Source of the DNA: Haliotis rufescens
Lineage: Eukaryota
Length of the DNA stretch: 64,000 bases
Assembly (NCBI RefSeq): GCF_023055435.1
Contig: NW_025964112.1
Location: 20,770,001 to 20,834,000, forward strand
Direction: 5' to 3'
Under the pieces are notes generated by a model. It was not told the origin of the DNA and ran no database searches. It worked only from the letters and a program-made list of their open reading frames with translations. The translations under genes were made by a program, and so were the position numbers. Shown piece after piece: positions 1 through 59,700 of this stretch (positions are counted from its first letter, which is position 1; each line of letters opens with the position of its first letter).

Positions 1-978
1 GATTGCCATGATAAAACATGGACCAAATATTATGTTGTTATTTTCAATAAACATAACCTTTACACCACTTTGTTTGAAACTTCTTTTTTACTTTTTTCCG
101 TTAGTATTATATGTTAAAGTAGTGTTGTTTGATTTTGCGTGTACAGTATAATTTTCAAATGTGATTATCAAATGTAGTTTCTTAGCTTTGAATATTTAAC
201 AACATTTGAATCATTTATATTAACACTAGTATTGTATTGTAGGCGATAGCGACACAACATTCGGAATATCGTTCAAAGGATTATTGAAATCACGTGTGTA
301 TTTCTAAATACATTTATGTCTTATCCGACCAGACATACGTAAAAGGATGCGGGCTCCATGGATTAGGATTTGTTTTTATTTAACCATGATAATTTTAACA
401 CGATTCTTTGATTTGGCAACCTATTCTTCTAAAATCTTGACTGAAAAAAAATGACTTGACTAACAGCTGATGATGTCACCTCTGATAAGTCGCCGTAATT
501 CTATGACCTCTTCAGGGTTGTTTAGCTGAAAACAGGACGCAATCTCCATATCACCATGACCTTATGAGATTAGCCTCCATTCGACTGAGAAAACTACTAG
601 TGTGGCTTTGATAATTCCGATTGATTCAGTCTCCGGGTCCATCGACCTACATCGGACAGTGTAACAAATTATTTAGTTTACAGAAAGTCAGGACTTTCAG
701 ATTTATACCAATGTTTTCTCAGCTGATTGCGCAGTAGTTCTAGGAATGTAAGATTTGTCAGAAGTAAACATTCAAATCACGAGATACATCATCAACATTG
801 TCCGTTAGTGTCTTACTTAAATATCCAGTGAGCTATTCCACGTGGGCAATACACATAAATTTATTATATATACGTGTCCGCGCTCGATAGCTTTTTCAAT
901 ACAACCCTTGTTTTTAAAAACATACGTTTATATAAACAGCTATCGCTCTTGAGATACACGTTGAAACGCCCGTTATAA
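1..978 (+). repeat. Segmental duplication block, copy of 48959-49936
   Basis: Near-identical colinear sequence at offset 48958; identity ends after CGTTATAA. Confidence 0.95.
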
Positions 979-1629
979 CCAAAACTACCTCTGAAACATA
1001 CTAACGGGCATGCCTAAACCCACAGAGAGAATGTACCAGCCCTCGTCCACTGCATTGGATGTATGTAGGTTATCTGATGCTAACACGGATATACAGTGTG
1101 AACTAAATATAATTGAAGAACGAAAACAAGAGATATACCACATTCTCACATATGTTTGCCAATGGCTACATTTGTCACGACCTAGTTTATTTACTTAGTT
1201 CCGGGTTGCTATTTTCTGTTAGTTCCGTTTCGTTCCCTCTAAAATATTCTACGTCGTAGTTTACAGATAGAGTAACGTAATCATCAGAAAAATACGTCTC
1301 GGTGCACTCATCCATGTGAAAAGATAAGACACACAAGTGGCGTTGTTTCCTTACGTACTACATTCATAAGAAAAACAACAGTTTACCTCAATTCATCAAG
1401 TCAACAACATGAAAGGGCTTAATGTCTCTGAAGTATATGTAACCATTTAAGCTAAAGATATGATTCACTCGTGGAAGCTGTGCTGTTTTAAACAGATGGT
1501 CATATAGGTTTAATGTTGACGCCTATGTCCGAACAGCTCCTTACGATAAAGGATAACGGTCCAGTTAGTGGTAGGAGTGTTAAAGTTAAAGCGTTCGCAC
1601 GACACGCCAAGGCCGAAGTCCACAAAACA

Positions 1630-1783
1630 GGGTGAATGAGTATGGTTTTACGCCGCTTTTAGCAATATTCCATCAATATCACGTCGGGGGACACCAGAAA
1701 TGGCCTTCACTCATTGTACCCATGTCGGGAATCGAACCCGGGTCTTCGAACGCTTCAACCAGTAGGCTACCCGACCGCCCCTC
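1630..1783 (-). mobile_element. tRNA-derived SINE (family 1)
   Basis: Reverse complement shows A-box GTAGCCTA.TGG, B-box GGTTCGATTCC and an ACTC-type tail; same family as 6290 and 50376. Confidence 0.85.
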
Positions 1784-2589
1784 CACGACACAGATGCTAG
1801 CCACATAGTTGTCCAAGGAATGAGTCTTTGTGTCCATGTGATTTCATCGTGCATGTGTGCACTGTATGTGTATATGTATGTGTATTTGAACAGTATTTCG
1901 GTCATATCAGGATCGTAGACATTTTTATACTTGGTGACACTCACGTGCATGGGTATAATGCTACCTCAGACCACGACATGCAGGCCAAGTGTGATGAAAT
2001 TGTGCAGATATACTACTATGCCCTTATATTTGGTTAAACACATTCTGCGTGTCTCAGGGTTGATCATGGTCTCCTATATTAGGAACGCCTGCTCAATCCT
2101 TTACAAATTGATATGAATCATTTGTGATGTTTTAATTTGTCAAATGTGGCTATCCAACGTTGATACATATTATGTGCGAGTGTGTGTAGTGGGTACATAC
2201 ATTGTTTCAGTGACATGTCAAATATTGCCACATATAAGGCCGGTATGTTAACAGAAGAAGGAATCTGCCAAACTATCACCTGTCACTGCTATCAAATATG
2301 GCTTAACTCTAAAACGTGAAAATATGTTCAGCGCTCTTTTGTACTGGATTCCAAAACTCTATAAAGATCTTTACAAAGAGATATACATTGCCGGGTCAAG
2401 CTAAATGTAATCCCTGATTAACCATTGTTAATCTAGAAAGGCCTGTTTATATATTCAAAGAAAGTATTTGAAACAAGTCAAATGAATACCATGTGGATTC
2501 TAAAAATCTCATATGATTTCCTTGAATACTAGTATCAGACAAGAACCAAGTTGAATTTTGTGAATTTTTTTAATTATTCAGGCTACACA

Positions 2590-3400
2590 CCACTATCCCA
2601 CACAACGAACTCAAGGCAAATGTTCATTTCTTGATCTATGGGGTATTTGTCACTAAACCTGATGACCAATGATATAGTTACTTCTCTATCTACAAAGGTG
2701 CAGGAATATGTGTCAAAAATGAAAGCAAAAGTCGTCTGAAGTTTAATGAGAAGCCAATATGTGAAATGCTGGACTTCCTCATAGAAACCCACATGTCAAA
2801 TCTGGGGATAGGACATTTTGACAAGCAGTGTTGTCCTCCCTTCCTTGCTGATCTGTTTCTTTAAGTCTATGAATCTGAATTTCTGATCGGATTTGCAAAT
2901 TCAAATTATGAGAATTTAACACAAGCTTTAGGTATATATGGATGGTCTGAAGTCGTTCAGTAATTGTCAAATAGCCAATTCCCTTCCATTGGTTTACCCT
3001 CCTGAACTAGAAAGAAAGGATACCAATGAAAACGCCACATGTGTTTAATATTTAGATCAATTTTCAAAGATTCAGTGACAGAAATCTCTCTACGAGACTG
3101 TTAGACAAGGCGATACAAATTTGATGCATCAGTGACGAAAATGACATCCTATGCAAAATTCCTTAGTTTATCTTGTACCATATGTTCCCTTGTTTGTTCA
3201 GGTGATCACTTGACTTACGTTTGATGTGTTAAAGGTGGGTTCAACTGATGCGGCAGGATACGCTCACCTCTACGCGAACATCTGGTAGCACAACTATTTA
3301 GTAGTGATTCTTAGACACATGCTTATGACATCGTCGGAATTGTACAATAGACTGATTTTAGCAGAGATAATGATGGAAGGGTTTTGTCACTTTTATTTAC
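2590..3400 (+). mobile_element. Degenerate Penelope-like retroelement RT remnant
   Basis: Broken frames read LLADLFL..YESEF, FRYI and YPPELE; homologous to 32330-33262. Confidence 0.6.
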
Positions 3401-4044
3401 AATATAAAATACAATAATAAAATTGTCAATGCAAGGTAATATCCAGCCTAGATTTTCTGCCCAAACAGATTCAACTTGGCGTAAAGGGCAAATAGCTGTG
3501 GAAATTATATGAATGGACCTCTGAAAATCAGTGATGACACCAGGTGTTCGCGAAAAGGGTAGGCATATCCTGCCCTGCCGTAGAATTACAGTGTTTCTGT
3601 TATATTCATGCGACTGTCATGGTCTTTGAGCACCACCATTACCGGCTTTAAGCGTACGTTAACTTAGCGTAGTTCTCTTCACCAATCACAATTTCTATGT
3701 TGCAAATCCCGCTTTCTTTCTTCCAAACCTTCCAATTACATTGCAACAACTGAAGACGATTCCAGTGGTCAGGACTGGTAATTCAGAAAGTGATTTGGTA
3801 GGTCATTAAAATGTGTCCCTGCTATTCAATGGGCAGAAGAAGGATTGGAAATGTTTAATGGGTGTGTCAGTGGAGGTTCAGGCCGCCTTTATTAACAATA
3901 TTCCAGCTATATCACGACTTGGGATACCATCAATGGCCTTCACACATTGGGGAAAAAGCTACAGATCATGCCGTTGCTTTGCAACAATTTGTGTAGATTT
4001 TCGAAATCTACGCCCAATTTCGAACCTGCATTACATTTTTGATG

Positions 4045-4050
4045 TTTATT
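4045..4050 (-). promoter_or_regulatory. Candidate polyadenylation signal of the BRICHOS gene
   Basis: AATAAA on the minus strand about 170 nt after the stop codon. Confidence 0.4.
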
Positions 4051-4219
4051 CAACGCCTTTCAAAATATATTATATTATATTATGTCCTTATCTTGTGGTG
4101 TTTGTATAACTTTGTGTGGCATTTACATGAATGCTGTTACTTCCTGTAACGAATGAATCAGAAAACAGCAAGTTGACGACAGTGGTTCTTGTCTCATTGC
4201 TGAGAAGCAAACAGTTTCT

Positions 4220-4362
4220 CTAACAAACTACTGTAACGTCAGTGTTACACGGATCAAACACGACGCCACTTGTGACTCGTCTGGCAAACTGCGAAATGCA
4301 CTTTCTTATTGGCCTCCACTTAAAGAAAAATCCTCTCTTGTGGCGCATGTTGGGGTTGACCT
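4220..4362 (-). CDS. BRICHOS gene last exon (RHKR site and 37-aa mature peptide at 4333-4223)
   Basis: Acceptor CTCTATTTCAG|, phase 1 matches exon 4, stop TAG at 4222-4220. Confidence 0.8.
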
Positions 4363-5358
4363 CTGAAATAGAGTAATATCAATTAACTGTGTAGTGACAG
4401 CATATGATAGCTTTCATTTATAGCTCATCACTCGAGTATAGCATGTTCAAGTACACAATGTTTACCGAGGACAAATCGTATTTGTCCCTGTTTATCTCCA
4501 ATCGATCAGACCCATGTAAATTGGGGTGCTTTAAGTAGTGTCTGTATTTCAACACTGCAGCTTCTTTCTTTTTTTAAAACACACTGTGCTTAAACATTGA
4601 TCATGCCATGTACACCTCCTATTTAGGCCCAGGAAATGTGTGTGACATATTGATCATCATCAGGGAAATTATGCAGGAAAAGGTGGCACCAAATCCAGAG
4701 GTGAACTTTATACTAGGCAACTGAACATTTTGGGGGGGAATGTGCAACGAACAAACTGGAGTCCTGCAGCCAGATACCCAAGAGCGACTGAAATGTTCAC
4801 ATGTAATAATAAGAAGGGGAATGCTCTTATGCTTGTCTTGTCTATGAAGACATGGTGTGTTTGGAGGGGTGGGGGTGGGGTGTCCTTCCTGTAACCCCAT
4901 TTTCGTAATGAGGAGAAGTATACCTCACTGTATACCACTGTAACTGGATAGCAGTCCGATTTCCCCTAACGACAGGCTGCTATCTATTCTATTGCTCTGT
5001 GACGTCATTGGCGTCGTTTCTTGTTCGTGACGTCATCCTATAGTATGTTCTATGACGTTGCTATTTGTAACTCATTGACCTCCGTTGTAAGCTTTTTTCT
5101 CTATAATTTATATAAATAAAGTCACGAACGAGGTTTCTTTAATAAATAATGTCTTTGCTCATCACATTTAATGATATTTAAATACGGTCCCATATCAGGT
5201 CAGTCACAAGCATCTTGGAATTTTTACTGACGGTATATGCTCATGTGGGGTGAGTAGTTCTGTCTGATTGGTCAATCTCACTTTGAGGCATAATAAATAT
5301 ATATTTTATGACTCAAAATGTGCCCGCTTACCATCAGTTAACTCCAAGATGGTTGTTC

Positions 5359-5435
<77 letters not shown>

Positions 5436-7565
5436 TACTAAGATAAATTTAACGTGTGTGATGTGATAGTAGGCTAAGATTATCGGTTCTACATACGTTT
5501 TGCATCAACCAGTCCGGAATATTTGCTGTCCACTAGGAACACTTCGTGATGGAGACAGAAGTCAGCTATGTGTGGTCCAAAGAGGAGTTTTACTGTCCAA
5601 GTCTTCAGTGGTGACAGTTTATCTACTCTGAGCCATTCCTCTTTAACACCGTCCAGCACATCATGAGCCTAATGAACAAAGTATGGGTGTGTGGTTATTC
5701 ATGTCATACTAGACAAGGCAGGACTGGCATAGGTAAACCAGTGGGAGAATGAGCATCTTCCTTACTGTAGGGATACGTTGCGGTATATATTAACCATGTA
5801 GTACCCCGTTCAATTACTATCATATGGTGCATTTGTCAAATACGATGCTATCAAGACAGATATCTTTATACTCAGATGCCATCAAGGCCATCTGACGTGC
5901 GCCATTAAATGCAAACAATAAGAAATTCGTTGTATCATTGAATTATCGTGACAATGAATCATATGCAACAAACCTTGTTTTAAACCTAGTAGACAATTAA
6001 TTCCAAACTCACACGTTTAGCCTCTTCTAAGCGCCGCTTCATGCCTGTCATAGTGGCGTTGAATCGTTGAATGTAGCACTGTTGATCGACTGCATTCCTT
6101 ATGGCTACAAAACTCTGTAAGGTGAGTTTCAAAATAATTAAGTATGAATATTTGCCAGGTATTCCAGGGGCAAGATTGGTATTGTTTTCACATAATATGT
6201 CACAGTATTTTAAACAGTTATTGCTTCTGGAAACACAACTCAAACGAACGGCAGAATCCTTTCGAAACATGAGGCCAAAACATTCAAGAGTGAGTGAGAT
6301 CTTACGCCGCTTTTAGCAATATTCCAGCAATATCACGGCAGGGGACACCAGAAATGGGCTTCACACATTGTACCCATGTCGGGAATCGAACCCGGGTCTT
6401 CAGCGTGAAGAGCGAACGCTTTACCACTAGGCTACCCGACCGCCCCGAAACATTCAAGAAACTGACTATTACTTTTCTTCTTAAAAACAAAATATATATA
6501 TATGTCATCAATGCGAGAAGTATTATACTTCTAGCTAAATATAGAAAGTGAACAATTATTGTGAAAATTTTTATGATGTGTAATGGGATGTAACAAAACG
6601 CTATATGGCTGAAATAATGCCGACGCGACGTTAATTTTTAACTCACTCATTGTAACCGTCATCATACATTCACATTGCGTTGAACAATGGCCAAACGAAT
6701 ACATAATGTGAAAATGGCTTGACCAAATATGGACACGGTGTACCTGTGCATGAATACATTGTTGTAAAACATAGTCGTACAGTGATAGTACGAGTCTACG
6801 TGTTCATGTAAGCCTTTGTTTAAAACATTACCCTTTCAATTTAATCTGATCAGTCTAAGCCTACGCATTTATATCCCCTAAGAGTTTTACGGCGGATTCC
6901 GGATTCCGTTTAAACCGCATTTATATTCCCGTTTAAACTGATCAGATAATTAAGTTGTATTTAATTTAAGATTTGGATTAATTCATGATTGGGAAATGTT
7001 CTTCACCGTTGAGAACACGTGCAGGTTGGTTGTTTCTCTGAAGCTGTCGAGAGCATTGGCAGGTTTGTGTGCTGTCACTTCCATTATGTCAGTGCCGAAT
7101 GTGACGTCGATGGGGATGATCTGGTCTCCAAACTTCCCTACGACATGGTACCCCTACAAACACATGACATTATATTTACATATACGCATCAAACAATACA
7201 CTGTGGAAGTTGCAAACATTTGTTTTAAGCGTTCGCTTACTTCAAACAAATTAAAAAATGTAATTGAATAGGCTACCATCGAAGAAGCTGTTAAGGGCAA
7301 GGTCAGGAGGAAACAACGTACTAGCATGACTGTATATGGTATACAAATATAAACATGTTATAATACAAGTGTAATAATAGTACAAGTGCTGAGAATCCGA
7401 AATGTTAAAGATACGTATAAGTAAATTATTGTATAAATGAGGAGGGATCCGCGACTAACACAGTAATACAAGTGTAAACTGTTGACAATATTGCCGACAT
7501 ACCTGAACTCCCGCACAACATCCAAACAGGAGGACACAGACAGCAACAGCGCTGAAGACTTGCAT
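4220..7565 (-). CDS. Secreted BRICHOS-domain precursor (208 aa) with furin-released C-terminal cationic peptide; coding exons 7565-7503, 7153-7007, 6114-6013, 5668-5497, 4362-4220
   Basis: All four introns are GT..AG with compatible phases (0,0,0,1) and there is no internal stop. Translation: MQVFSAVAVCVLLFGCCAGVQ / GYHVVGKFGDQIIPIDVTFGTDIMEVTAHKPANALDSFRETTNLHVFST / SFVAIRNAVDQQCYIQRFNATMTGMKRRLEEAKR / AHDVLDGVKEEWLRVDKLSPLKTWTVKLLFGPHIADFCLHHEVFLVDSKYSGLVDAK / QVNPNMRHKR-GFFFKWRPIRKCISQFARRVTSGVVFDPCNTDVTVVC*. The BRICHOS pattern (LHxFxxxFVAIR..CYI, then GxxIxxFC) was recognised by eye. Confidence 0.85.
5207..5355. mobile_element. Small MITE-like inverted-repeat element in the last BRICHOS intron
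   Basis: CAAGCATCTTGGAA..ACTGACGGTA pairs imperfectly with TACCATCAGT..CTCCAAGATGGTTG. Confidence 0.5.
5360..5433. repeat. (CA)n microsatellite
   Basis: Perfect dinucleotide run. Confidence 0.98.
5497..5668 (-). CDS. BRICHOS gene coding exon 4 (second BRICHOS Cys, GPHIADFC)
   Basis: Acceptor TTTGTTCATTAG|, 57 open codons plus 1 nt, donor |GTATGT. Confidence 0.85.
6013..6114 (-). CDS. BRICHOS gene coding exon 3 (first BRICHOS Cys, CYI)
   Basis: Acceptor CCTTACAG|, donor |GTGAGT; lies inside ORF 5986..6270. Confidence 0.85.
6290..6447 (-). mobile_element. tRNA-derived SINE (family 1), full length with TSD
   Basis: Flanked by direct repeat AAACATTCAAGA (6278-6289 and 6448-6459). Confidence 0.92.
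7007..7153 (-). CDS. BRICHOS gene coding exon 2
   Basis: Acceptor TTTGTAG|, 49 open codons, donor ACG|GTGAAG. Confidence 0.82.
7503..7565 (-). CDS. BRICHOS gene coding exon 1 (signal peptide)
   Basis: ATG at 7565, hydrophobic MQVFSAVAVCVLLFGCCAGVQ, donor CAG|GTATGT. Confidence 0.85.
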
Positions 7566-8499
7566 GATTTGGGGCTTGATGTCACAAACTAAGAATAAAG
7601 TAAACGATTGGTCATTTTAATGCACGTGATGGTAAGTAAAAGAATGACATTGACTCCACAGTCGATAACAACGTATACATAATGTTGCATAAACCGTCAG
7701 TAAGTTCATTTGTACATGTAACAATAATAAAGTGACGTCTTCTCAGCTGTCGTATGAACATCATGTTTATAATACTTGAACGTATTGTTATAGTGCAAAC
7801 CATTTCAATACTTTTATTTAAAATAGTGCAAACCATATTTCAAAACTTATTTAACATTTCATTTATCTAAATACCTAACTGGTTCAATATGTTTCCAAGT
7901 GCACCGAAATTCTATGCCTTTGTCTGTTTAATATATTCAGCAAACATTCGGCGTATCCCCTTTTATCATAAACCCCTCCGGGCAGGACCCTTAATCTCCA
8001 GCGCTATCTATAAATTCCAATTAACACCTCCTTACGTCGCCGGATCTTACGTATATACATACACGTCGGACAATGACCTTGCCACACGTTACGTAATACC
8101 TCGCTCTACAAAACCCGACTGACATTGTCAGTCAGGGAGACAGCCAGAAGGTAAGTGACAGAGCGAGTCTCCAACCGGGAACATTGGCCACTCGGTCCCG
8201 GTGTGCGTTCTGTCACGTTATTATGAACATGTACCTTTTCGACTCATTTCAACCTGCACCAATAAACATGGCTGTTGTCGTCTTAACTTCACCCCTGAGG
8301 TTTGTCTTCCGTCATCCCCCTGAGCTACCATCCGAGGGCCGACACTTACGCCCTTGGACAGTATGTTTGGCCGTTGATTTCAGCAGGGCGTGTAAGTACA
8401 AATGGTCCAGTGTTCACTTTCAATGCATGGAGAATCGTTACATTCCAGTAGTCCAAGCAATGAGTAAATATCCCAGGCATATACTTCTCCATGAAGATA

Positions 8500-17491: not shown

Positions 17492-18415
17492 CTAAGGGAG
17501 ATAATTGTTTGATCCAAAAGTAATTTTGTCAGGAAGTTTGGTTCCTTTGAAAGTCAGGATGATAGTGGAGGTGTTTGTTGGGGGACCTTGTGGGTTTTGT
17601 CTGGTGATCCTTAAAAGATTAATGATTTGAGGCTGGGTTTGGAGTTTATTTGATTCAATTACGTAAGCTTTGAGGTCGTGGTCAGACTCTGCAGGGTCGG
17701 TGTAAATGACCCCTTTTGTTTCAGATAGCCAACGAGGAGTCTGCCACGACAGATTGATGCCATCTATTGATGTTTGTTTCATTGCCACATTGAGGTCATA
17801 TTGTAAGTTAAAGTTTATTTTGAAGGCTCTGCCGCAGCTGTTTATAAATTTGAATTTTAGATGGGCTTGTTTTAGTATAAGCCCAAATCTGTTTTTGGTG
17901 TACAGTGAAGTGAGTGGGGTGGGACCTGTATTGAATGCTAGAAGTACAAGATGTTGATTGTTGTTTGAGTTAGGTTGTGTACAACTCTGTCGTTTCTGTA
18001 TCTTCGACTGCGTTTCAAGATCTTCGGGTGATTGTAGAGGGCGTTTTCCCCCAATGGCGGTGGCTGTGGCTAAGTTATTTAGTAGATTAGACTGGGAGCT
18101 GCGGGGAGTAGTCATTGAGATGCTGGGCGAAATTGGAGGGGATTTTCCGAAAGTGGGAGGGATGAGGTTAGTGGGATTACTTAGATCGAGTGGAGGGTAC
18201 TGGAAACTAGTGGAGATTTTAGCGGGGGTTGAAGTGAGTGAAGGGGAAGGAGAAGTGGTGAAGGTAGATGATCGTAGCTTACAGTCTTTTCTTGAGGGAC
18301 GTTTGTCTTTCTGTTTGTCTAGGGTTGAAGTTGATATTGTTGCTTGGGGTGTGGACAGCGGGCGGTCATGTCGGTTTTTCTGCCGATCGAGTGATAGGGT
18401 CCGATTTGCCGCCAT
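17492..18415 (-). mobile_element. Gag-like ORF1 of a non-LTR retrotransposon (I/Jockey group), truncated before the zinc knuckles
   Basis: 307-aa ORF with Ser/Pro/Thr-rich N-terminus, then KGVIY...RITR..TSTIILTF.G.KLP.KI.FG typical of LINE ORF1; no CCHC motif or ORF2 follows. Confidence 0.7.
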
Positions 18416-21236: not shown

Positions 21237-21570
21237 CACAGGCTAACATTGATAACTAGAAACAAGACATGAAGAAAATTTGCATCTGGAAACCTTCCGG
21301 AAACCTTCAAGATGCCTTCAGCAACCTTCAAATTTCTTGGTATTTTCAAGATAATTTTTTTATGTGTTNNNNNNNNNNNNNNNNNNNNNNNNNNNNNNNN
21401 NNNNNNNNNNNNNNNNNNNNNNNNNNNNNNNNNNNNNNNNNNNNNNNNNNNNNNNNNNNNNNNNNNNNNNNNNNNNNNNNNNNNNNNNNNNNNNNNNNNN
21501 NNNNNNNNNNNNNNNNNNAAGGTTTCAGGAAGGTTTCCGGAAGACGGAAACCTACACTTTTTTTGCTGTG
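21237..21570. mobile_element. Non-autonomous DNA transposon with CACAG..CTGTG ends and 5-bp TSD (Transib-like), spanning an N gap
   Basis: ATATG|CACAG...CTGTG|ATATG; subterminal inverted repeats GGAAACCTTCCGGAAACCTT and AAGGTTTCAGGAAGGTTTCC. Confidence 0.6.
21369..21518. other. Assembly gap
   Basis: Run of N. Confidence 1.
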
Positions 21571-23678: not shown

Positions 23679-23846
23679 NNNNNNNNNNNNNNNNNNNNNN
23701 NNNNNNNNNNNNNNNNNNNNNNNNNNNNNNNNNNNNNNNNNNNNNNNNNNNNNNNNNNNNNNNNNNNNNNNNNNNNNNNNNNNNNNNNNNNNNNNNNNNN
23801 NNNNNNNNNNNNNNNNNNNNNNNNNNNNNNNNNNNNNNNNNNNNNN
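23679..23846. other. Assembly gap inside a ~128-bp tandem repeat
   Basis: Run of N; ACCCTGAGTACGCTGTGACATG recurs at 23847 and ~23975. Confidence 0.95.
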
Positions 23847-28650: not shown

Positions 28651-31600
28651 ATGAACAACCAGGTGAAAATGGTTCTGCTTGGTCGTCATGGTTGCGGCAA
28701 AACTGCAGTGATAGAATCATTTCGTTGCACATCCATTACGCAGCCAACATCTTCGCTTTTGGCGGACAATGTTCATACAGTGACAAAGCATGACTCTAAC
28801 ATAAGCATTATTGAAATGACTGGGCTGTTTGCAGAAGGACAAGATAAAAAAGCAAATAAAATGAGACTTGCAGAATCGGTGTACACCTTCACACCAGGCC
28901 CTGATGCTTTTGGGCTTGTAGTTCGAATAGGTCGATTTACGCCAGAAGTGAGGACAATGATAGACACTCTTAGAGAAACGTTTGGTGCAGATATGTTCCG
29001 ATTTACCGTCCTCATCTTTACAAGATTGGATGATCTCAAGTATGATGGCATCACTCTGGAGAAATACCTACAAGAGAGTACACCAGAGCTGAAGAGTGTC
29101 CTTGATGCTTGTGGGGGAAGATACATCGGCTTTGACAACACAGGAACGTGGGAATCCAGAGCGGAGGATGCCGATAAACTTCTATCCATGTTGAAGAATC
29201 TCCAGAAGCAGAACAACAACATGGTCTATACAGTGGCCATGCTCGAGTACGCCACAAGGTGTCAACAGAAGAAAGAGGAAGAAGATCGGAATCAACAAGA
29301 TGAGCGCAACCGAAATATTAAAGAAGAGTTGAAAAGTACCATGAGACAGGAACTTGAAGAACAGATAAGAAGAGAGATGCAAGCTGAACTCACGTCAAAC
29401 ACTCAACAGACATGTATTACAACAGGATGTAGTATGTACACTTTTGTACATTATACTGTTCTGGGCATGGATTCTCACCTTCGTGTTTAATATTATATTA
29501 ATATTCAGTATAATTATTTTTAGTTTAGTATTTAGTGAAATTGTGCAACTATTTAATGGGTACGAGTAATATTTCTACAAATATATGGAATGAGATATGA
29601 ACATCATATACTCTTCAAAAAAAGAAACGCAAAGCCGGATTTGTGTGAGGTAGAAAAATACATTTATACAAGGAACCGTACAAGGTATTGAGCCAAAATG
29701 TTGTGGAGAGAACACTTAGTGATTGTAGTCATCTCAGTTATCGGTACCGGTAGGAAAAGCCCAAGGTGAAGGTCAACTACTATCAATAGTATCGATAGCG
29801 GCCTGACATCTCCTGCATAATGGAAGAAACGAGTATTCCTGGGGAATGGTAGCCCACTCGGCCTGCTACGCAAAACCCAACTACTGCAACGTCAGGGGTT
29901 GTGGTTGACGTCGGCGTAGCCGTCTATCCAATTCATCCCACGGGTGCTTTATCGGGTTCAAATCCGGGGATCTGGAGGGCCAGGGGAGAACATCAACGTT
30001 GTTGTGTAGACAGGTTCTTGTGATCCGTGCTGTATGCGGTTGAGCGTTGTCCTGATGGAATACAGCGTTGCCGTTGGCTGCAATTGGGAGGACGTGTGGT
30101 AGGAGAATATCGTTGATGTATCGTTGAGCCGCAAGATTGCCCTGTATATGGACCATACCTGCCCTGCCATGATGAGAGATTACCGCCCGCATCATAACGC
30201 TACCCCCATCAAATCTGTCCACTACCTGTACGCAGTTTCCGGCGCAACGTTCTTCCCAACGTCTGTAGACCCGTGCTCTTCGATCCCGTCTACGGAGGAG
30301 AATTCTTGACTCGTCGCTGGACCAGACATCTCCTCATCGCAGTTGACGACACCAATGCAGTCGTTGTTGACGATGTTGTCCACTCATGGGATGCGGTTGA
30401 GGTGGCTGTGGTCGTCCTTTCACGTAGGTGGCGCAGTCGGATGTAGCGATGTTGGGCAGGGATGGTTACTCTTGGTCGTCCCGACCTTGGCCGATCACGT
30501 GTTGACCAATGCTGTTGAAACCAATCCCATATCCTTGTGATGGTGCTGGGCGCTACATTGAAAGCCCTAGCTACAGCTGATCGGGATTCCCCTGCCTGCA
30601 AGCGGCCTATGACGTTGTTTCTTTGCACTTCTGTTAATCTTGGCATGTTGTTGAATTGTCACTGTTCTATTGACGCAGATGCCAGGCAATCAAAAACCCT
30701 GCAATTTAATACCGTTCATAGTGCTTCTGCATGTGCACTGGTGCGTTTTTCCGAACCGTACGTGTTTCCCGACCAATGGTTTGCATGTCCTTGCTATGAT
30801 CATTTTGATCCGGGACATTTTCACTGACACTTTAACGGATGACCAAACATATCCGTTTTGCGTTTCTTTTTTTTAAGAGTATATTTCATTTTAAATGTTC
30901 ATTATTTTGTTGTCAAATTTGTTTTATATAACAGAACGTATCACCTTCTTTTTGTGTTGTAATCATAGAGCCACGCAAACTCCAAACACAAATATATACC
31001 AGACAGACTGTTGAATCGGGGGACAAGTTCAATGAGAGAATACCAAAAAAAGGTAAACTTTTTCTTGAATATTTTAGTTTCCTACCCACTGACAAAATCT
31101 ATTAAGTGCTCTTCATTCTTTTAGACATTATGCACGGCATGCGTCATACATTTGTTAGTCTCAAGTACTCTTTAACATATACCTTATTTCCAGGTGCTAA
31201 TCGATCCAAACACGAAAGAGGACCAAGGCCGGAGTTTAAGCCAAAGCCTACAACTCGAAAAGTGCAAGAAAATATCATTTCCCGAGACACTCATGAGCAA
31301 GATGCTGGTATGTGTTAAATGCAGTGTTGCATAATCAGAAATCTCGTAAACGTTTACCATGGCAGAGATATGTTCTGTGTGATCTTTGATTCCACAATTC
31401 AGCTGTAAGGGTTAAATAAGTAAATATAATCATGTTGTGTCGTAAATGTATGAGTGAGTGAGTGAGTATACGTGTGCGTGTGCGAATAATAGATTGTAAA
31501 TTACTAATTACTGTTCAATTGACTTGGCAATAATTAATATATCTTATATTTGTTTGTTTGTAGCTCAAAACGAAAGACATGCAACTGTAGACGACACCAG

Positions 31601-38000: not shown

Positions 38001-39290
38001 GTCGTATTTCTCAGCGTTTAGTAATATGTCTCATTCTTAAACAATGATATTTGATATATGCTGTATGATGTTTGTGCGCCATATATAAAAGCATTTTTTT
38101 GTCTTTCAGAATTGGGCGAATTGAGACTGGTACTACTTGGTAAAACTGGAGCAGGAAAGAGTGCAACAGCAAACACAATAATGAATAAGAAGGTTTTTGA
38201 TTCAAGATCGTCGATGACCTCGGTAACCGAAAAATGTCAGTTTGTTCATGGCGATTTATTTGGCAACACCATCCAGATTGTTGATACACCCGGATTATTT
38301 GACACCAACACAAAGAAGGAGGTTATTGATACAGAAATTAAGAAATGTATTGCACTTTCGGCCCCAGGACCACATGCCTTTTTGTTGGTTTCATCCTTAA
38401 CCAACAGGTTCACAGAGGAAGAAGGGAAAGTCTTTGACGAAATTGACGACATGTTTGGGGAGCAAGTGCTCAACTACATGGTCATCGTCTTCACTGGAAG
38501 AGATCAGATCGAACCTAAGACAGTGGAGACACACATTCAAGGCGCACCTGACAAATTAAAACAGATTTTAAGTAACGCTGGAGGAGGATATGTCACCTTC
38601 AACAACAGAGGAAAGGAACTTGAAAAGGAAGCGGATGTAAAATGCCTTATTCAACGCATCAAAGACACAGTGAATAAGAATGGAGGGAAACATTTCACCT
38701 CAAAAATGTTCCAGGAGGCAGAAGAAATTATTCAAGAGAGAATCAAGAGAGATAGAGCTGACAAAGAAAAAGAGATGAGAAGGGAAATTGAGGAAGAATT
38801 GCGCGAAGAGATGAACGAGTTCATGCAGAACGAGAGGGAGTATTATGAGAAGCTTCATGAAGCCAATGTGAAAGAAATGGAAGATTTAAAACTTCAACTA
38901 AAGGGAGAGCGGGATACACATGCCAGAAAGCGTTCACTTGTTAGAGAGAATGAGAGGACCATGGGGGAGCTGGTACAGAGTGAGATGGAGATGAGGGCAA
39001 AGAAGAACAAACTTGTAGGGCAGTTGCAGAAGGCTGATGGTGAAGAGAAAGTGCAAATGCAGCGTCAACTGGCAAATGTTGGGGAGGAGGTGACGCGCAT
39101 ACTTGCTAAAAGGAAGAGAGTAGAAGATGAAGTCACAAATGACCGATTTTCAGCAGAATGTAATTTGAGAGCACAACAAGTAAGAGAAACTGAAAGGGAA
39201 AACATACAGAACGAAGATGAAGCAACACTCAGTAGATTCGCTGCAGGCATGAAGAATATGGGGAGGCGTTTTCTCAAGTTATTTAAGTAG
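35036..39290 (+). CDS. GIMAP: GIMAP/AIG1-family GTPase B with N-terminal RanBP2-type zinc finger and Pro-rich linker; exons 35036-35137, 36120-36260, 38110-39290; first exon unresolved
   Basis: Canonical GKTGAGKS, SVT, DTPG, PGPHAFLLV..RFT.EE, FTGRD, FNN and a long coiled coil. Two upstream phase-1/phase-1 exons: WVCATCYHNNDAANDSCQGC and DAQRTSPPLPVQAPPPPP. Confidence 0.85.
36388..37838 (-). mobile_element. HINE-like element in a GIMAP-B intron
   Basis: Minus-strand 5' end TTATCCCCCGCCAC..GTCTGTCCG resembles the 39890 element; 3' hairpin GCATTA..TAATGC followed by CTTGTT. Confidence 0.5.
37020..37745 (+). mobile_element. 3' fragment of a LINE nested in the HINE
   Basis: WLNNVQKSL..CGM; ETGRW..ADEFHYL..C; AATAAA near 37726. 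Confidence 0.65.
38110..39290 (+). CDS. GIMAP: GIMAP-B main exon (AIG1 domain and coiled coil)
   Basis: Acceptor TTTTTGTCTTTCAG| at 38109; the ORF-track start at 38058 is intronic. Confidence 0.95.
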
Positions 39291-44552: not shown

Positions 44553-47500
44553 TAAGCGATGCTGAAAGTTTTTTCGACACATTGCTTGAAAAGTATTATT
44601 TGTATCAAAATGAAGGTTTCACAATTATTTGTGGGGACTTTAATGCACGGATGGGGTCACAAAGAGACTATATAGCCGGGGTAGACGAGGTGCCCGACAG
44701 AGATGTCATAGACCATACCGATAATTCTCATGGTTCTCTATTTTTAGATTTTCTCATTAACTGCAATCTATGTATGTTAAATGGCCGTATTGGAAATCAT
44801 GACTATACATATGTTAAAAATGGATGTTCGATCGTAGACTATATTGTGACCTCACATGAGAACTTACCTTTGTTTACTGATTTTAATGTCACTAGAATGA
44901 CAAGCTTTGTTGACGCCTCGTCTGTCCCTGATGTTATCCCTGATCACTCTGTTATTACTTGTGATGTGAGGATTCCTAATGAGGTCAGTAGCCCTCGGTG
45001 TGATGAACCTTTACCTGATTACTATAGCCGTAAGAGATATAAACAAAGTGGGATTGATGACAATCTTTTTGACGATACGAGTACAACACTTGTCTCTGAT
45101 ACTATCCGTAGAATTGAGTTTAATTTATCGGTACAACAAGATGTTAATGCTGCATATGAGGAGTTCTTAACTTGTTTATACTCTGAGCTAGACAGTAAAG
45201 TTGGCACGTATGAAAATAAAACGAAAACGTCTAACAAGAAATCCCTCCGTAAACCTTATTGGTGTGCAGAGCTTCAGTCTGCCTGGGACCTAGTAGTTGA
45301 TAGTGAACGTCTATGGCTCAGATGTAAGAATGTCTCTCAGAAACGGGCATTAAAACACGTCTTTGTCTCTAATCGTAAATCTTTTGATAAGCTGCATAGA
45401 AAATTCAAACGCTCCTTTCAGTTAGAACGTCAGCAGCGACTGTTGCATAAATACAAAGATAGTAATAGCAGAGATTTTTGGAAACTTATTGGTAAGATTG
45501 GCTTAGCTTCCGATCGGGATTCTGTCATTCCATGGGAGATAATCCAGGGAGACACGGTTGTCACCGATAAGTCGCGGGTTTTAGATGCATGGAAATGTGA
45601 GTATAGCTCGTTGTTTAACGCTGATCCAGTGGGTGTATTTGATGAATCTTTCTATGATCAGATCAAGGACGAGTTAAGCAACATGGTTGTTGACCCCCCT
45701 CAGGTAGATGTAGATGTAAACAGTCTGCAGGCCCCTATATCACGCGATGAGGTAGTACGCTCTGTTAGCCGCTCTAAGTGTGGTAAGGCCGTAGGCTGTG
45801 ACCATATACCTGCAGATGCACTTAAGAATGAGACTTGTGTTGACATTCTGCACCGGATATTTACTTACTGCTTCGAGAATAATGTTTTTCCAGATATTTG
45901 GCATGAAAGTATAATAACGCCTATTAAGAAACCGGGTAGTGACCCCAGAGATCCCCTTGGCTATCGTGGTATATCACTACTTTCCATTCCCTGTAAGATA
46001 TATTCAGATATACTAAACTCTCGTTTCACAAGTTGGCTAGAAGATAATGACATATTGGCTGAGGAGCAAAATGGATTTCGAAGTAAGCGTAATACTATTG
46101 AGCACATATACACTTTGTTTTCAGTAATTAATAACAGGAAATCTTCAAAGTCCTCTACATTTGTCTGTTATATTGATGCCATGAAGGCCTTTGACCGTGT
46201 TAATCGAGACTGCTTATTATGGTACAAACTGATGAAGTTAGGAATTAATGGTAAATTTTATTCTGCTGTAAAGTCTTTATATGACAACAGTGTATCCCGT
46301 GTATCGGTAAATGATCGGCTTACTGAAGGGTTTGATATACAGAGCGGTGTCAGGCAGGGATGTGTCTTGTCCCCATCACTATTCTCAGTATTCATTAATG
46401 ACCTGGCCCATGAGATAAACAATCCAAAATGCGGTGTAGACGTTGGTGGTAGTCTTCTCAGTCTTTTGATGTATGCTGATGACATAGCATTAATTGCGCC
46501 AAATGAGCATTCATTACAATCAATGCTTCACTGTGTTGCTGATTGGTGTAAGAGATGGCGAATTCAAGTTAATACCAGCAAAACTAAAGTAGTACATTAC
46601 CGGCCACCATCTGTGAAACGAACATCATTTGAGTTTCAGTGTGGCAATGACAACATTGACATATGCTCATCATACAAATATCTTGGTTTATGGCTAGAAG
46701 AACACTTAAATTTGAATTCTACAGCCAAAGAAATCGCCAAATCCGCGAGTAGAGCTCTGGGTGTAATTATAAGTAAATTTAAACTATTTGGAGGAATGCC
46801 ATATGACGTATATAATACGCTATTCAATAATCTTGTTCAACCAATTTTATCATATGGCTCAGTTATTTTTGGCAATCGAGAATTCAGTTGTATAAACGCA
46901 GTTCAAAATAAAGCTTGTCGTTTTTTTCTCGGGGTGGGTAAATATACTCCAAATTTAGCTGTCCGGGGCGAGATGGGTTGGCCTGCTCAGCTTACTAAAC
47001 AGAAAATAGAAGTTTTCCGATTTTGGAGAAAGATAAACTCTGTTCCGCCATCTAGACTTGTTTCACAGATTCGAAATTGGTCTCTTACCTTCCGCAAATC
47101 ATGGGATAAGACAGTTAACGCAATGTTTATATCACTACAACTTCCATCTATGGATTTGTTTAATTTCTCTATTAGTGAATTCCATCTAATCACACGCACT
47201 TTGAGATGCAAGGACGCCGATTGTTGGTCACGTGATTTATGGAATGACACTGGTCATGAACATGGGAATAAGTTGAGGACTTTCAGACTCTTTAAGAATA
47301 CTCTAAATACGTCGACCTATGTCCGCTCTGTTTTAGACAGACAGCAACGTAGTACCTTGGCAAAACTACGCTGCAGTTCTCTCCCTTTGGAGGTTGAAGT
47401 TGGTCGCTACTCCCGTCCAAAGACACCACTACACCTCCGTTTATGGAGGTTATGTGACCGCCAGTGAACACGAAGTACATTTCCTCACAGAATGTGAATT

Positions 47501-56799: not shown

Positions 56800-59700
56800 A
56801 TGAACAACCAGGTGAAAATGGTTCTGCTTGGTCGTCATGGTTGCGGCAAAACTGCAGTGATAGAATCATTTCGTTGGACATCCATTACGCAGCCAACATC
56901 TTCGCTTTTGGCGGACAATGTTCATACAGTGACAAAGCATGACTCTAACATAAGCATTATTGAAACGACTGGGCTGTTTGCAGAAGGACAAGATAAAAAA
57001 GCAAATAAAATGAGACTTGCAGAATCGGTGTACACCTTCACACCAGGCCCTGATGCTTTTGGGCTTGTAGTTCGAATAGGTCGATTTACGCCAGAAGTGA
57101 GGACAATGATAGACACTCTTAGAGAAACGTTTGGTGAAGATATGTTCCGATTTACCGTCCTCATCTTTACAAGACTGGATGATCTCAAGTATGATGGCAT
57201 CACTCTGGAGAAATACCTACAAGAGAGTACACCAGAGCTGAAGAGTGTCCTTGATGCTTGTGGGGGAAGATACATCGGCTTTGACAACACAGGAACGTGG
57301 GAATCCAGAGCGGAGGATGCCGATAAACTTCTATCCATGTTGAAGAATCTCCAGAAGCAGAACAACAACATGGTCTATACAGTGGCCATGCTCGAGTACG
57401 CCACAAGGTGTCAACAGAAGAAAGAGGAAGAAGATCGGAATCAACAAGATGAGCGCAACCGAAATATTAAAGAAGAGTTGAAAAGTACCATGAGACAGGA
57501 ACTTGAAGAACAGATAAGAAGAGAGATGCAAGCTGAACTCACGTCAAACACTCAACAGACATGTATTACAACAGGATGTAGTATGTACACTTTCGTACAT
57601 TATACTGTTCTGGGCATGGATTCTCACCTTCGTGTTTAATATTATATTAATATTCAATATAATTATTTTTAGTTTAGTATTTAGTGAAATTGTGCAACTA
57701 TTTAATGGGTACGAGTAATATTTCTACAAATATATGAAATGAGATATGAACATCATATACTCTTCAAAAAAAGAAACGCAAAGCCGGATTTGTGTGAGGT
57801 AGAAAAATACATTTATACAAGGAACCGTACAAGGTATTGAGCCAAAATGTTGTGGAGAGAACACTTAGTGATTGTAGTCATCTCAGTTATCGGTACCGGT
57901 AGGAAAAGTCCAAGGTGAAGGTCAACTACTATCAATAGTATCGATAGCGGCCTGACATCTCCTGCATAATGGAAGAAACGAGTATTCCTGGGGAATGGTA
58001 GCCCAATCGGCCTGCTACGCAAAACCCAACTGCTGCAACGTCAGGGGTTGTGGTTGACGTCGGCGTAGCCGTCTATCCAATTCATCCCACGGGTGCTTTA
58101 TCGGGTTCAAATCCGGGGATCTGGAGGGCCAGGGGAGAACATCAACGTTGTTGTGTAGGCAGGTTCTTGTGATCCGTGCTGTATGCGGTTGAGCGTTGTC
58201 CTGATGGAATACAGCGTTGCCGTTGGCTGCAATTGGGAGGACGTGTGGTAGGAGAATATCGTTGATGTATCGTTGAGCCGTAAGATTGCCCTGTATATGG
58301 ACCATACCTGCCCTGCCATGATGAGAGATTACCGCTCGCATCATAACGCTACCCACATCAAATCTGTCCACTACCTGTACGCAGTTTCCGGCGTAACGTT
58401 CTTCCCAACGTCTGTAGACCCGTGCTCTTCGATCCCGTCTACGGAGGAGAAATCTTGACTCGTCGCTGGACCAGACATCTCCTCATCGCAGTTGACGACA
58501 CCAATGCAGTCGTTGTTGACGATGTTGTCCACTCATGGGATGCGGTTGAGGTGGCTGTGGTCGTCCTTTCACGTAGGTGGCGCAGTCGGATGTAGCGATG
58601 TTGGGCAGGGATGGTTACTCTTGGTCGTCCCGACCTTGGCCGATCACGTGTTGACCAATGCTGTTGAAACCAATCCCATATCCTTGTGATGGTGCTGGGC
58701 GCTACATTGAAAGCCCTAGCTACAGCTGATCGGGATTCCCCTGCCTGCAAGCGGCCTATGACGTTGTTTCTTTGCACTTCTGTTAATCTTGGCATGTTGT
58801 TGAATTGTCACTGTTCTATTGACGCAGATGCCAGGCAATCAAAAACCCTGCAATTTAATACCGTTCATAGTGCTTCTGCATGTGCACTGGTGCGTTTTTC
58901 CGAACCGTACGTGTTTCCCGACCAATGGTTTGCATGTCCTTGCTATGATCATTTTGATCCGGGACATTTTCACTGACACTTTAACGGATGACCAAACATA
59001 TCCGTTTTGCGTTTCTTTTTTTTAAGAGTATATTTCATTTTAAATGTTCATTATTTTGTTGTCAAATTTGTTTTATATAACAGAACGTATCACCTTCTTT
59101 TTGTGTTGTAATCATAGAGCCACGCAAACTCCAAACACAAATATATACCAGACAGACTGTTGAATCGGGGGACAAGTTCAATGAGAGAATACCAAAAAAA
59201 GGTAAACTTTTTCTTGAATATTTTAGTTTCCTACCCACTGACAAAATCTATTAAGTGCTCTTCATTCTTTTAGACATTATGCACGGCATGCGTCATACAT
59301 TTGTAAGTCTCAAGTACTCTTTAACATATACCTTATTTCCAGGTGCTAATCGATCCAAACACGAAAGAGGACCAAGGCCGGAGTTGAAGCCAAAGCCTAC
59401 AACTCGAAAAGTGCAAGAAAATATCATTTCCCGAGACACTCATGAGCAAGATGCTGGTATGTGTTAAATGCAGTGTTGCATAATCAGAAATCTCGTAAAC
59501 GTTTACCATGGCAGAGATATGTTCTGTGTGATCTTTGATTCCACAATTCAGCTGTAAGGGTTAAATAAGTAAATATAATCATGTTGTGTCGTAAATGTAT
59601 GAGTGAGTGAGTGAGTATACGTGTGCGTGTGCGAATAATAGATTGTAAATTACTAATTACTGTTCAATTGACTTGGCAATCATTAATATATCTTATATTT

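What the first reader, a model, noticed from the sequence alone, without database searches (positions are those of the whole stretch)
4220..7565. Hidden five-exon BRICHOS precursor gene, a candidate host-defence peptide system
Seen: five minus-strand exons with GT-AG introns join into an uninterrupted 208-aa ORF; only exon 3 appears in frame in the ORF track. Architecture is signal peptide, BRICHOS-like domain with the two conserved Cys (QQCYI, IADFC), RHKR, then a short C-terminal peptide. Established: polychaete antimicrobial peptides (arenicin, alvinellacin, capitellacin, nicomicin) are made from BRICHOS proproteins, where BRICHOS is thought to chaperone a beta-prone C-terminal peptide; ITM2B likewise releases a peptide by furin cleavage. 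Inference: this is a mollusc-type BRICHOS peptide precursor, possibly uncharacterised, sitting in a GIMAP immune cluster.
Basis: partly seen in the sequence, partly recalled or inferred. Interest (0 to 1): 0.9.

Follow-up and report, generated by a model that had tools for sequence, protein, structure and literature searches.

The report
Abalone BRICHOS-like peptide precursor gene
This is a real, spliced and transcribed red-abalone gene, already in RefSeq as an "uncharacterized protein", that encodes a secreted divergent BRICHOS-type proprotein with a conserved furin-type site before a 37-residue cationic peptide; it is a plausible but untested first mollusc counterpart of the worm BRICHOS antimicrobial-peptide precursors.

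Summary
Five minus-strand exons with GT..AG introns join into a 208-codon frame. All four junctions appear exactly in spliced contigs of four runs from four studies.

The gene is not hidden. The product is identical to Haliotis rufescens XP_046351798.2, "uncharacterized protein LOC124132144", with no domain on record. A near-identical second copy lies 76 kb away.

The BRICHOS assignment is probable but below threshold:
- Pfam PF04089 scores 17.8 bits against a cut-off of 25, while covering 4-87 of 91 profile positions.
- BRICHOS is the top or near-top Pfam hit in most relatives.
- The language-model neighbours are all BRICHOS.

R-x-K-R followed by a three-cysteine peptide is invariant in four Haliotis species. 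About 15 paralogues in three subfamilies share the plan of signal peptide, BRICHOS and polybasic site, with different short tails.

Antimicrobial function is inference only. The papers I could search report BRICHOS antimicrobial peptides from annelids alone. Verdict: new member of a known kind, of moderate interest. The scan had also flagged a BRICHOS-like domain on another piece of this genome (s1-818259).

The parts
7503..7565 (-). Exon 1 coding part: start codon and 21 residues forming a hydrophobic signal-peptide-like segment. The transcript 5' end lies near 7590.
   Evidence: frame, GT donor at 7502-7501. (joint 7153/7503 in X1, X2 and X6; contig end near 7590 in X1). (Kyte-Doolittle mean 2.61 over residues 3-18; small residues at -1/-3 around residues 18-22). 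(helix 4-15).
7007..7153 (-). Exon 2: residues 22-70. It encodes the N-terminal beta-strands that extend the sheet and the first BRICHOS strand (the FRETTNLHVF motif).
   Evidence: joint 6114/7007. (48-53% identical exon in the contig C90 paralogues). (strands 21-29, 32-40, 44-49, 62-67).
6013..6114 (-). Exon 3: residues 71-104. It holds the BRICHOS strand with Cys83 (CYI), an N-glycosylation sequon N89-A-T and helix 1.
   Evidence: this exon alone gives PF04089 E=0.095, profile 15-35 of 91. (joints on both sides). (sequon).
5497..5668 (-). Exon 4: residues 105-161 plus the first base of codon 162. It holds the second half of the BRICHOS-like domain with Cys142 (DFC) and the linker.
   Evidence: (the exon-4 translation finds the 208-aa public protein at residues 105-161). 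(paralogues 37-40% identical).
4220..4362 (-). Exon 5 coding part: residues 162-208 and the stop codon at 4220-4222.
   Evidence: (joint 4362/5497 in all four runs; no alternative last exon among the joints shown).
4334..4345 (-). Codons for R168-H-K-R171, a furin/proprotein-convertase consensus R-x-K-R.
   Evidence: R168, K170 and R171 are invariant in four Haliotis species (RHKR, RRKR, RSKR); paralogues carry RRRKR, RRHKR, RRYKR or RLRR at the same place.
4223..4333 (-). Predicted released peptide, residues 172-208 (37 aa). The N-half is cationic and aromatic (net +6); the C-half is hydrophobic and Val-rich (net -2). It has three conserved cysteines (183, 200, 208).
   Evidence: net charge +4, pI 9.6, helical hydrophobic moment 0.53 for the N-half. 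Identity to the H. rubra and H. asinina orthologues is 62-65% here, against 78-81% in the BRICHOS core. The structure is not predictable (pLDDT below 50).
5537..7036 (-). Genomic span of the BRICHOS-like domain (residues 61-148), interrupted by introns 2 and 3.
   Evidence: PF04089: residues 61-145 against profile 4-87 of 91, 17.8 bits, E=0.004. (AlphaFold pLDDT 71-92). (2YAD matches).
3392..4219 (-). 3' untranslated region down to an AATAAA signal at 3392-3397.
   Evidence: transcript contigs continuous from 4362 through 3700 and beyond, to about 3459-3532. (AATAAA). Three runs and genomic copy 2 carry an extra 162-170 nt between 4074 and 4082.

Best explanation
The locus is one of two near-identical copies (LOC124132144 here, LOC124132146 76 kb away) of a Haliotis gene for a secreted pre-pro-protein.

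Proposed mechanism:
1. Exon 1 supplies a cleavable signal peptide.
2. Residues about 22-160 fold into an extended beta-sheet with two helices. This is a divergent BRICHOS domain, closed by a Cys83-Cys142 disulfide between the CYI strand and the short second helix.
3. As in other BRICHOS proproteins, the domain is proposed to shield the aggregation-prone, Val-rich C-terminal segment during passage through the secretory pathway.
4. A furin-type convertase then cuts after R168-H-K-R171 and frees a 37-residue cationic, aromatic, three-cysteine peptide.
5. That peptide is the likely effector, most plausibly a membrane-active host-defence peptide.

What is shown: the gene model, splicing and transcription; conservation of the site and the peptide; the family-wide plan of signal peptide, BRICHOS and polybasic site, with a short tail in most members.

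What is inferred, with my odds: BRICHOS homology about 0.85; convertase cleavage about 0.7; chaperoning of the tail about 0.5; antimicrobial activity about 0.4.
For: Gene model and RNA:
-.
- The model is identical to a RefSeq protein.

BRICHOS assignment:
- PF04089 is the best Pfam family for P0001 (E=0.004, near full-length coverage). It is the best or a near-best family in most of the 17 relatives scanned (all but P0015 and P0017) and in all three subfamilies. Examples: P0005 at 21.1 bits and P0018 at 21.6 bits, both covering about 5-90 of 91 positions.
- Exon 3 alone hits profile positions 15-35.
- ESM Atlas: the ten best named neighbours are all BRICHOS clusters. The score is 0.94 for P0001 and 0.92 for the 34%-identical P0018; they include gastrokines and a mollusc cluster.
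- The AlphaFold model built from 17 sequences has pLDDT 71-92 over residues 21-160. Its order of strands and helices is the one described for BRICHOS, with Cys83 in a strand and Cys142 next to the short helix (topology from PMC9714404).
- Foldseek ranks five 2YAD chains first among 350,542 PDB chains (probability 0.85-0.96, TM by target 0.50-0.56). The Bri2 BRICHOS entry 8RNU is also listed.

Processing:
- R-x-K-R is invariant and the peptide is conserved, with all three cysteines, in four species.
- Most paralogues keep the polybasic site in front of quite different short tails. This is the pattern of the annelid BRICHOS-related peptide precursors: BRICHOS, then a dibasic motif, then an 18-91 aa cationic tail, with 13 precursors in one worm (PMC10745061).

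Peptide properties.
Against: - Every Pfam score is below the 25-bit gathering cut-off.
- Family profiles find no solved BRICHOS by sequence.
- The Asp conserved in BRICHOS appears to be replaced. By sequence register the position is H66 or V67 in the NLHVF motif. No explicit alignment could be obtained.
- The peptide has an odd number of cysteines and an acidic C-half, unlike the classical beta-hairpin peptides.
- Several paralogue tails are neutral or acidic, which fits poorly with a purely antimicrobial family.
- There are no tissue, induction, peptide-level or activity data.
- The RNA contigs are mosaics of the two reference copies, so expression cannot be assigned to the window's copy.
- The run kinds are guesses of the index; the RNA reading rests on the spliced contigs.
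Confidence: 0.55

Rival explanations
1. It is a gastrokine-like secreted BRICHOS protein of an epithelium such as gut, gill or mantle. The C-terminal part is not an antimicrobial. It may stay attached, or be released for another role such as mucosal protection, signalling, disulfide cross-linking into mucus or matrix, or metal binding.
For: - The size (about 180-210 aa) and the plan of signal peptide plus BRICHOS, without a transmembrane anchor, match gastrokines.
- Gastrokine-2 and gastrokine-1-like clusters are among the nearest language-model neighbours.
- Subfamily B tails end in CCCC and are often neutral or acidic.
- The odd cysteine count suggests intermolecular bonds.
Against: - Gastrokines lack a conserved R-x-K-R in front of a short tail. 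Here the site is invariant in subfamily A and kept in most members of the three subfamilies.
- The subfamily A peptide is strongly cationic and aromatic in its N-half.
Confidence: 0.25
2. It is a prohormone or neuropeptide-like precursor. The convertase-released C-terminal peptide would be a signalling ligand, and the upstream domain only a pro-region.
For: - Signal peptide plus a conserved R-x-K-R plus a conserved C-terminal peptide with cysteines.
- The peptide is only moderately more variable than the domain: 62-65% against 78-81% identity. This is less than many fast-evolving immune effectors.
Against: - There is no amidation signal and only a single peptide copy.
- The pro-region is a large, well-conserved folded domain with BRICHOS features.
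- The family is tandemly expanded to about 15 genes with unrelated tails. That is more typical of effector families than of hormones.
- Contig depth is high in all four runs, although depth is a poor measure of expression.
Confidence: 0.07
3. The domain is not BRICHOS. It would be a lineage-specific secreted beta-sheet domain of another kind, for example a LolA- or ependymin-like hydrophobic-ligand binder, and the BRICHOS signals would be chance.
For: - Pfam is below cut-off everywhere.
- There is no sequence hit to a solved BRICHOS.
- The BRICHOS Asp is apparently missing.
Against: - Four different methods point to the same family: an HMM, language-model features, Foldseek 3Di and the architecture.
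- Both cysteines fall on the expected strand and helix.
- 2YAD is aligned over 90% of its ordered residues, and its small size caps Z.
- The Foldseek probabilities of the LolA and EPDR hits are mostly lower, and their alignments have large rmsd.
Confidence: 0.13

Closest known systems
Annelid BRICHOS-related antimicrobial peptide precursors (preproarenicin, alvinellacin, capitellacin, nicomicins, HfBRI peptides)
   Same: - The plan: N-terminal hydrophobic segment, BRICHOS, basic cleavage motif, short C-terminal peptide.
- A multi-gene family in one genome with structurally different tails. Heteromastus filiformis has 13 precursors (PMC10745061); red abalone has about 15 genes in three subfamilies.
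- The subfamily A tail is cationic.
- The contig C112 paralogue has a 21-residue tail of alternating hydrophobic residues around a Gly-Pro, the same length as arenicin.
   Different: - The phylum. The papers I could search describe BRICHOS peptides only from annelids (PMC9756803, PMC11767717).
- No sequence similarity of the tails is known.
- Three cysteines, against the paired cysteines of the hairpin peptides.
- An acidic hydrophobic C-half.
- Activity is untested.
- Homology of the pro-domains to the worm precursors was not tested here, because no worm sequences were on hand by reference.
ITM2B / Bri2 (and the ITM2 family)
   Different: Bri2 is a type II membrane protein with a transmembrane anchor, whereas this protein has a cleavable-looking signal peptide. 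There is no detectable sequence similarity. The peptide is longer and has three cysteines.
Gastrokines (GKN1, GKN2)
   Same: Secreted proteins of about 185 aa with a signal peptide and one BRICHOS domain. They are among the nearest language-model neighbours (0.90-0.92).
   Different: Gastrokines have no conserved polybasic site releasing a C-terminal peptide, and they are a vertebrate stomach-mucosa family.
OAF (out at first)
   Same: It was recognised as BRICHOS only through structure and profile comparison. It has a signal peptide, a furin site and a disulfide-rich mature C-terminal polypeptide (PMC9714404). OAF clusters appear among the neighbours.
   Different: OAF's mature part has 70 residues and four disulfides and is highly conserved from fly to human. 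Here the tail has 37 residues and is restricted, so far, to Haliotis.

Membership tests
BRICHOS domain (Pfam PF04089) | Score at or above Pfam's gathering cut-off (25 bits) | tested here: not met
   P0001 scores 17.8 bits (E=0.004). The best family members reach 21.1 bits (P0005) and 21.6 bits (P0018). All are below 25 bits, but with near full-length collinear coverage of 4-90 of 91 positions. The cut-off is a curation threshold, not a biological feature, so I call the domain 'divergent BRICHOS-like, probable homologue'.
BRICHOS domain (Pfam PF04089) | Two conserved cysteines forming the strand-to-helix-2 disulfide | tested here: met
   Cys83 (CYI/CYV strand) and Cys142 (FC, at the end of the short helix 136-141) are invariant in all 17 family sequences. 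They sit on the expected elements of the model.
BRICHOS domain (Pfam PF04089) | [quoted passage not shown] | tested here: inconclusive
   No tool gave a residue-level alignment to a genuine BRICHOS. By register (my own reading against the D-Y-x4-I-A motif of proSP-C, recalled from memory) the position falls on H66 or V67 of the invariant N-L-H-V-F motif. The Asp is therefore probably replaced. Asp80 (VDxxCY) is conserved in 16 of 17 sequences (Asn in P0017) but lies elsewhere.
BRICHOS domain (Pfam PF04089) | The BRICHOS fold: a beta-sheet flanked by two helices | tested here: inconclusive
BRICHOS pro-protein architecture | N-terminal signal peptide or transmembrane segment, a convertase site after the domain, and an aggregation-prone C-terminal segment | tested here: met
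   Met by sequence only. There is a hydrophobic 21-residue N-terminus encoded by its own exon. R-x-K-R is invariant. The C-half of the tail is Val-rich. SignalP and ProP were not available, and cleavage has not been shown.
BRICHOS-related antimicrobial peptide precursors (annelid type) | BRICHOS followed by a dibasic motif and a positively charged C-terminal peptide of about 18-91 aa (the operational definition of PMC10745061) | tested here: met
   KR at 170-171 is followed by 37 residues with net charge +4 and pI 9.6. Several paralogue tails are neutral or acidic and would not meet the charge criterion.
BRICHOS-related antimicrobial peptide precursors (annelid type) | Demonstrated antimicrobial activity of the released peptide, and its presence in immune cells or secretions | not testable with these tools
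   There are no activity, peptidomic or tissue data. Run identities are coded, and no paper names the gene.
BRICHOS-related antimicrobial peptide precursors (annelid type) | Common descent with the annelid precursors | not tested
   No annelid precursor sequence was available by reference. Searches found relatives only in Haliotis, but those searches have limited reach.

The most novel reading that the evidence does not exclude
Abalones carry a lineage-expanded family of BRICHOS pro-proteins. Red abalone has about 15 genes in three subfamilies, with three unrelated classes of convertase-released tails. This would be the first BRICHOS-chaperoned host-defence peptide system outside annelids. The 37-residue three-cysteine peptide of this locus would be a new antimicrobial scaffold active against abalone pathogens, and the family would show that coupling BRICHOS to toxic or aggregation-prone peptides is either ancient in lophotrochozoans or has arisen repeatedly.
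Probability: 0.3. Interest if true: 0.65.

Novelty: new member of a known kind. Interest (0 to 1): 0.5.

Why it matters
In the literature I could search, BRICHOS-linked antimicrobial peptides have been reported only from annelids, where mining for BRICHOS precursors has been the most productive route to new beta-hairpin antibiotics. A mollusc family with the same precursor logic would:
- extend that mining strategy to a second phylum;
- give candidate defence peptides for a farmed and, in California, threatened group that suffers from bacterial disease;
- offer a natural series for studying how BRICHOS handles different clients, because one conserved domain is paired with three very different tails.

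It would also attach a domain and a testable function to about 15 RefSeq "uncharacterized" genes. It is not a conceptual surprise: the architecture is the textbook BRICHOS pro-protein plan.

Tried and rejected
- **Exon-by-exon Pfam scan.** Only exon 3 gave a weak BRICHOS hit. The pieces are too short to decide anything.
- **The joined model.** I joined it only inside scripts, to check the frame and to compare it with a public protein. All later searches used the public protein P0001, which the exon-4 search returned and which is identical to the model.
- **AlphaFold with five close orthologues.** It failed (pLDDT 34). The 17-sequence alignment was needed.
- **Sequence searches against PDB chains.** Queries were the family profiles A2 and A3 and the single protein P0018. 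None found a BRICHOS chain; the only matches, for A2 and P0018, were chance hits (ZP2, a PilZ protein, CT771).
- **Complex prediction of the domain (22-167) against the peptide (172-208).** No answer (score 0.01). This counts neither for nor against binding.
- **Pfam BRICHOS against the whole genome exon by exon.** One canonical exon on another contig was found. This locus was not found; it is too divergent at exon level.
- **Whole-library phmmer with the 57-residue exon 4.** It found only the protein itself plus a low-complexity false hit (P0002). This says nothing about distant relatives.
- **Literature search for the LOC and XP identifiers.** It found nothing.
- **Processed pseudogene or DNA origin of the spliced contigs.** Considered and rejected. 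The genome holds no intronless copy, and exon depth exceeds intron depth more than 100-fold.
- **The two N runs (21369-21518, 23679-23846).** Left untouched.
Full report
**1. The observation**

Reading the minus strand of 4100-7700 and joining 7565-7503, 7153-7007, 6114-6013, 5668-5497 and 4362-4220 in a script gives 627 nt. That is 208 codons and a stop, with no internal stop. All four introns have GT..AG ends, and the intron phases are 0, 0, 0, 1.

**2. Transcription and splicing**

An index search found 14 small runs that hold 20-37% of the stretch's words. That is roughly the exonic share.

I laid four of them on 3700-8100: X1, X2, X5 and X6, from four organism labels and four studies. Contigs skip exactly 4362/5497, 5668/6013 and 6114/7007 in all four runs, and 7153/7503 in three. 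Every skipped part ends CT..AC on the plus strand, which is GT..AG on the gene's strand.

Exon word depth is about 600-3500 against about 5 in introns. The genome holds no intronless copy. The contigs are therefore spliced RNA, even though the index only guesses the run type.

The transcript starts near 7590. It runs on through a 3'UTR to at least about 3460-3530, and an AATAAA lies at 3392-3397. No alternative last exon appeared among the joints shown.

One caveat: contig depth is not an expression level, and the tissue is unknown because run names are coded.

**3. Identity of the gene**

The exon-4 translation, searched by reference against 1.84 billion representative proteins, found one true hit. 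It is a 208-aa protein matching at its residues 105-161. That protein (P0001) is letter-for-letter the spliced model.

P0001 is Haliotis rufescens XP_046351798.2, "uncharacterized protein LOC124132144", with no Pfam domain on record. The gene is therefore not hidden, but it is uncharacterised.

Everything after one search used P0001.

A second copy, LOC124132146 (P0004), lies 76 kb away on the same contig:
- It is 98.5% identical over 6 kb, introns included.
- It has four coding differences: 7088 (silent), G94D, L99I and Q162H.
- It has a 170-nt insert in the 3'UTR.

The RNA contigs carry a mixture of these states: D94 and the insert, but Q162. Expression therefore cannot be assigned to one copy.

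Orthologues exist in H. cracherodii (98% identical), H. rubra (73%) and H. asinina (74%).

**4. Is it BRICHOS?**

Against:
- No score passes Pfam's 25-bit cut-off.
- The family profiles (A2, A3) and the single paralogue P0018 find no solved BRICHOS chain by sequence.

For:
- PF04089 is the best Pfam family for P0001 (17.8 bits, E=0.004). The match covers residues 61-145 against profile positions 4-87 of 91.
- Exon 3 alone maps to profile positions 15-35.
- PF04089 is also the best or a near-best family in most relatives in all three subfamilies, which are only 29-38% identical to P0001. Two of the 17 (P0015, P0017) gave no hit. Coverage is 4-90 of 91 in nearly all hits, and the best scores are 21.1 and 21.6 bits.
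- Language-model features place P0001 at 0.94 and the distant paralogue P0018 at 0.92 next to clusters that are all BRICHOS. These include cnidarian and mollusc BRICHOS proteins, gastrokines, OAF and proSP-C.
- AlphaFold with five orthologues failed. With 17 family sequences it gave pLDDT 71-92 over residues 21-160.
- The order of elements in that model is three N-terminal strands, three more strands, a long helix, a strand, a short helix pair and two strands. Cys83 sits in a strand and Cys142 at the end of the short helix. This is the arrangement described for BRICHOS in PMC9714404.
- Foldseek ranks five chains of 2YAD (proSP-C BRICHOS) first among 350,542 PDB chains, although at E about 0.1-0.2. 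Bri2 BRICHOS (8RNU) is also listed.

By register, the conserved BRICHOS Asp seems to be replaced by His or Val in the invariant NLHVF motif. I could not obtain a residue-level alignment to confirm this.

Taken together I put BRICHOS homology at about 0.85 and call the domain divergent.

**5. The processing site and the peptide**

In the four species R168, K170 and R171 are invariant (RHKR, RRKR, RSKR). The tail keeps its length, its three cysteines and the pattern G-x-F-F-x-W-R-P ... K-C ... D-P-C-N-T ... V-C.

The tail is 62-65% identical between distant species, against 78-81% for the BRICHOS core. It is conserved but somewhat freer to change.

The peptide (window:4223-4333:-) has net charge +4:
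- Its first 19 residues carry +6, five aromatic residues and a helical hydrophobic moment of 0.53.
- Its last 18 residues are hydrophobic, Val-rich and net -2.

AlphaFold cannot place the tail (pLDDT below 50). A domain-peptide complex prediction gave no answer.

**6. The family**

Searching the genome with the protein and with the family profile finds:
- two genes on this contig (subfamily A);
- at least eleven in a tandem array on contig C90 at 11.11-11.63 Mb (subfamily B);
- one on contig C112 (subfamily C).

All have the same exon plan. RefSeq models of the paralogues were retrieved through an open frame around the exon-3 homologue of a C90 paralogue. Most have a signal peptide, the BRICHOS-like domain and a polybasic site (RRRKR, RRHKR, RRYKR or RLRR). 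The tails differ:
- Subfamily B has a 14-25 residue tail that is Ala- and Val-rich and usually ends in CCCC.
- Subfamily C has a 21-residue cysteine-free tail of alternating hydrophobic residues around a Gly-Pro. It looks like a beta-hairpin and has the length of arenicin.

A few database models lack the site or the tail. P0016 has no R-x-[KR]-R, and P0014 ends before it.

One conserved domain and cleavage site, paired with unrelated tails, is the pattern reported for the annelid BRICHOS-related peptides. Heteromastus filiformis has 13 precursors with tails of 18-91 residues (PMC10745061). However, several abalone tails are neutral or acidic, so the family as a whole need not be antimicrobial.

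**7. Context**

Three ORFs in the window (28651-29490, 38058-39290, 56800-57639) are AIG1/GIMAP GTPases, with E from 2e-31 to 5e-64. Adjacency says nothing about function.

One mussel digestive-gland study lists a BRICHOS-domain protein, a defensin-like protein and an IMAP GTPase among the transcripts raised by toxic algae (PMC4203926). This is a hint only.

**8. Comparison with what is known, and novelty**

Reviews state that BRICHOS antimicrobial peptides are known only from polychaetes. Later additions are echiuran and other annelid peptides (PMC9756803, PMC11767717, PMC12466427, PMC13001179).

My searches for BRICHOS together with Haliotis, abalone, gastropod, oyster or mantle found no primary report of a mollusc BRICHOS peptide precursor. 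No paper names these loci.

The architecture itself is the standard BRICHOS pro-protein plan (Bri2, OAF, worm precursors). I therefore class this as a new member of a known kind. The gene, its splicing and the architecture are established. Cleavage, chaperoning and antimicrobial action are inferences, with odds of about 0.7, 0.5 and 0.4.

Relatives were found only in Haliotis. Those searches have limited reach, and a mollusc BRICHOS cluster near P0018 suggests a wider group.

**9. Limits**

- SignalP, ProP and HHpred were not available.
- The N runs were left as they are.

Noticed in passing
G000:C90:11110000-11630000 (loci L003-L015, L018): A tandem array of at least 11 paralogues (RefSeq 'uncharacterized' proteins P0007-P0009 and others). 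Each has a signal peptide, a BRICHOS-like domain, RR[RHY]KR and a 14-25 residue Ala/Val-rich tail that mostly ends in four or more consecutive cysteines. The role of the CCCC tail is unexplained; metal binding, cross-linking and lipidation are open possibilities.
   Followed up: partly
G000:C112:8960750-8961924 (L016; protein P0018): A third subfamily member. After RLRR its tail is a 21-residue, cysteine-free run of alternating hydrophobic residues around a Gly-Pro. It looks like a beta-hairpin and is arenicin-sized. Its Pfam BRICHOS score (21.6 bits) is the best in the family.
   Followed up: partly
G000:C334:20850333-20853697 (L017), 76 kb beyond the window's copy: A second gene copy (LOC124132146), 98.5% identical including introns. 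It has three amino-acid differences and a 170-nt insert in the 3'UTR. RNA contigs from four runs are mosaics of the two reference copies, which suggests allelic variation or gene conversion.
   Followed up: partly
window 6290-6450 (intron 2, minus strand): A tRNA-like SINE. Contig word depth is about 10^5 in all four runs, and there are many loose ends and rearranged joints. It is a very abundant, transcribed repeat family.
   Followed up: no
window 5353-5441 (intron 4): A long (GT)n microsatellite. The reads tool skipped it as a repeat.
   Followed up: no
window 28651-30646 and 56800-58795: Two nearly identical units 28.1 kb apart. Each has a 279-aa AIG1/GIMAP ORF followed on the other strand by Tc1/mariner-like transposase fragments.
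   Followed up: partly
window 44582-47467 (+) and 17492-18415 (-): A 961-aa ORF with the look of a LINE endonuclease/reverse transcriptase, which I did not scan against any family library, and a 307-aa Ser/Pro/Thr-rich ORF with no Pfam match. Both are probably mobile-element remains between the genes.
   Followed up: no
window 4074-4082: A presence/absence polymorphism of 162-170 nt in the 3'UTR. It is absent from the window's copy and present in copy 2 and in transcripts of three of four runs.
   Followed up: partly
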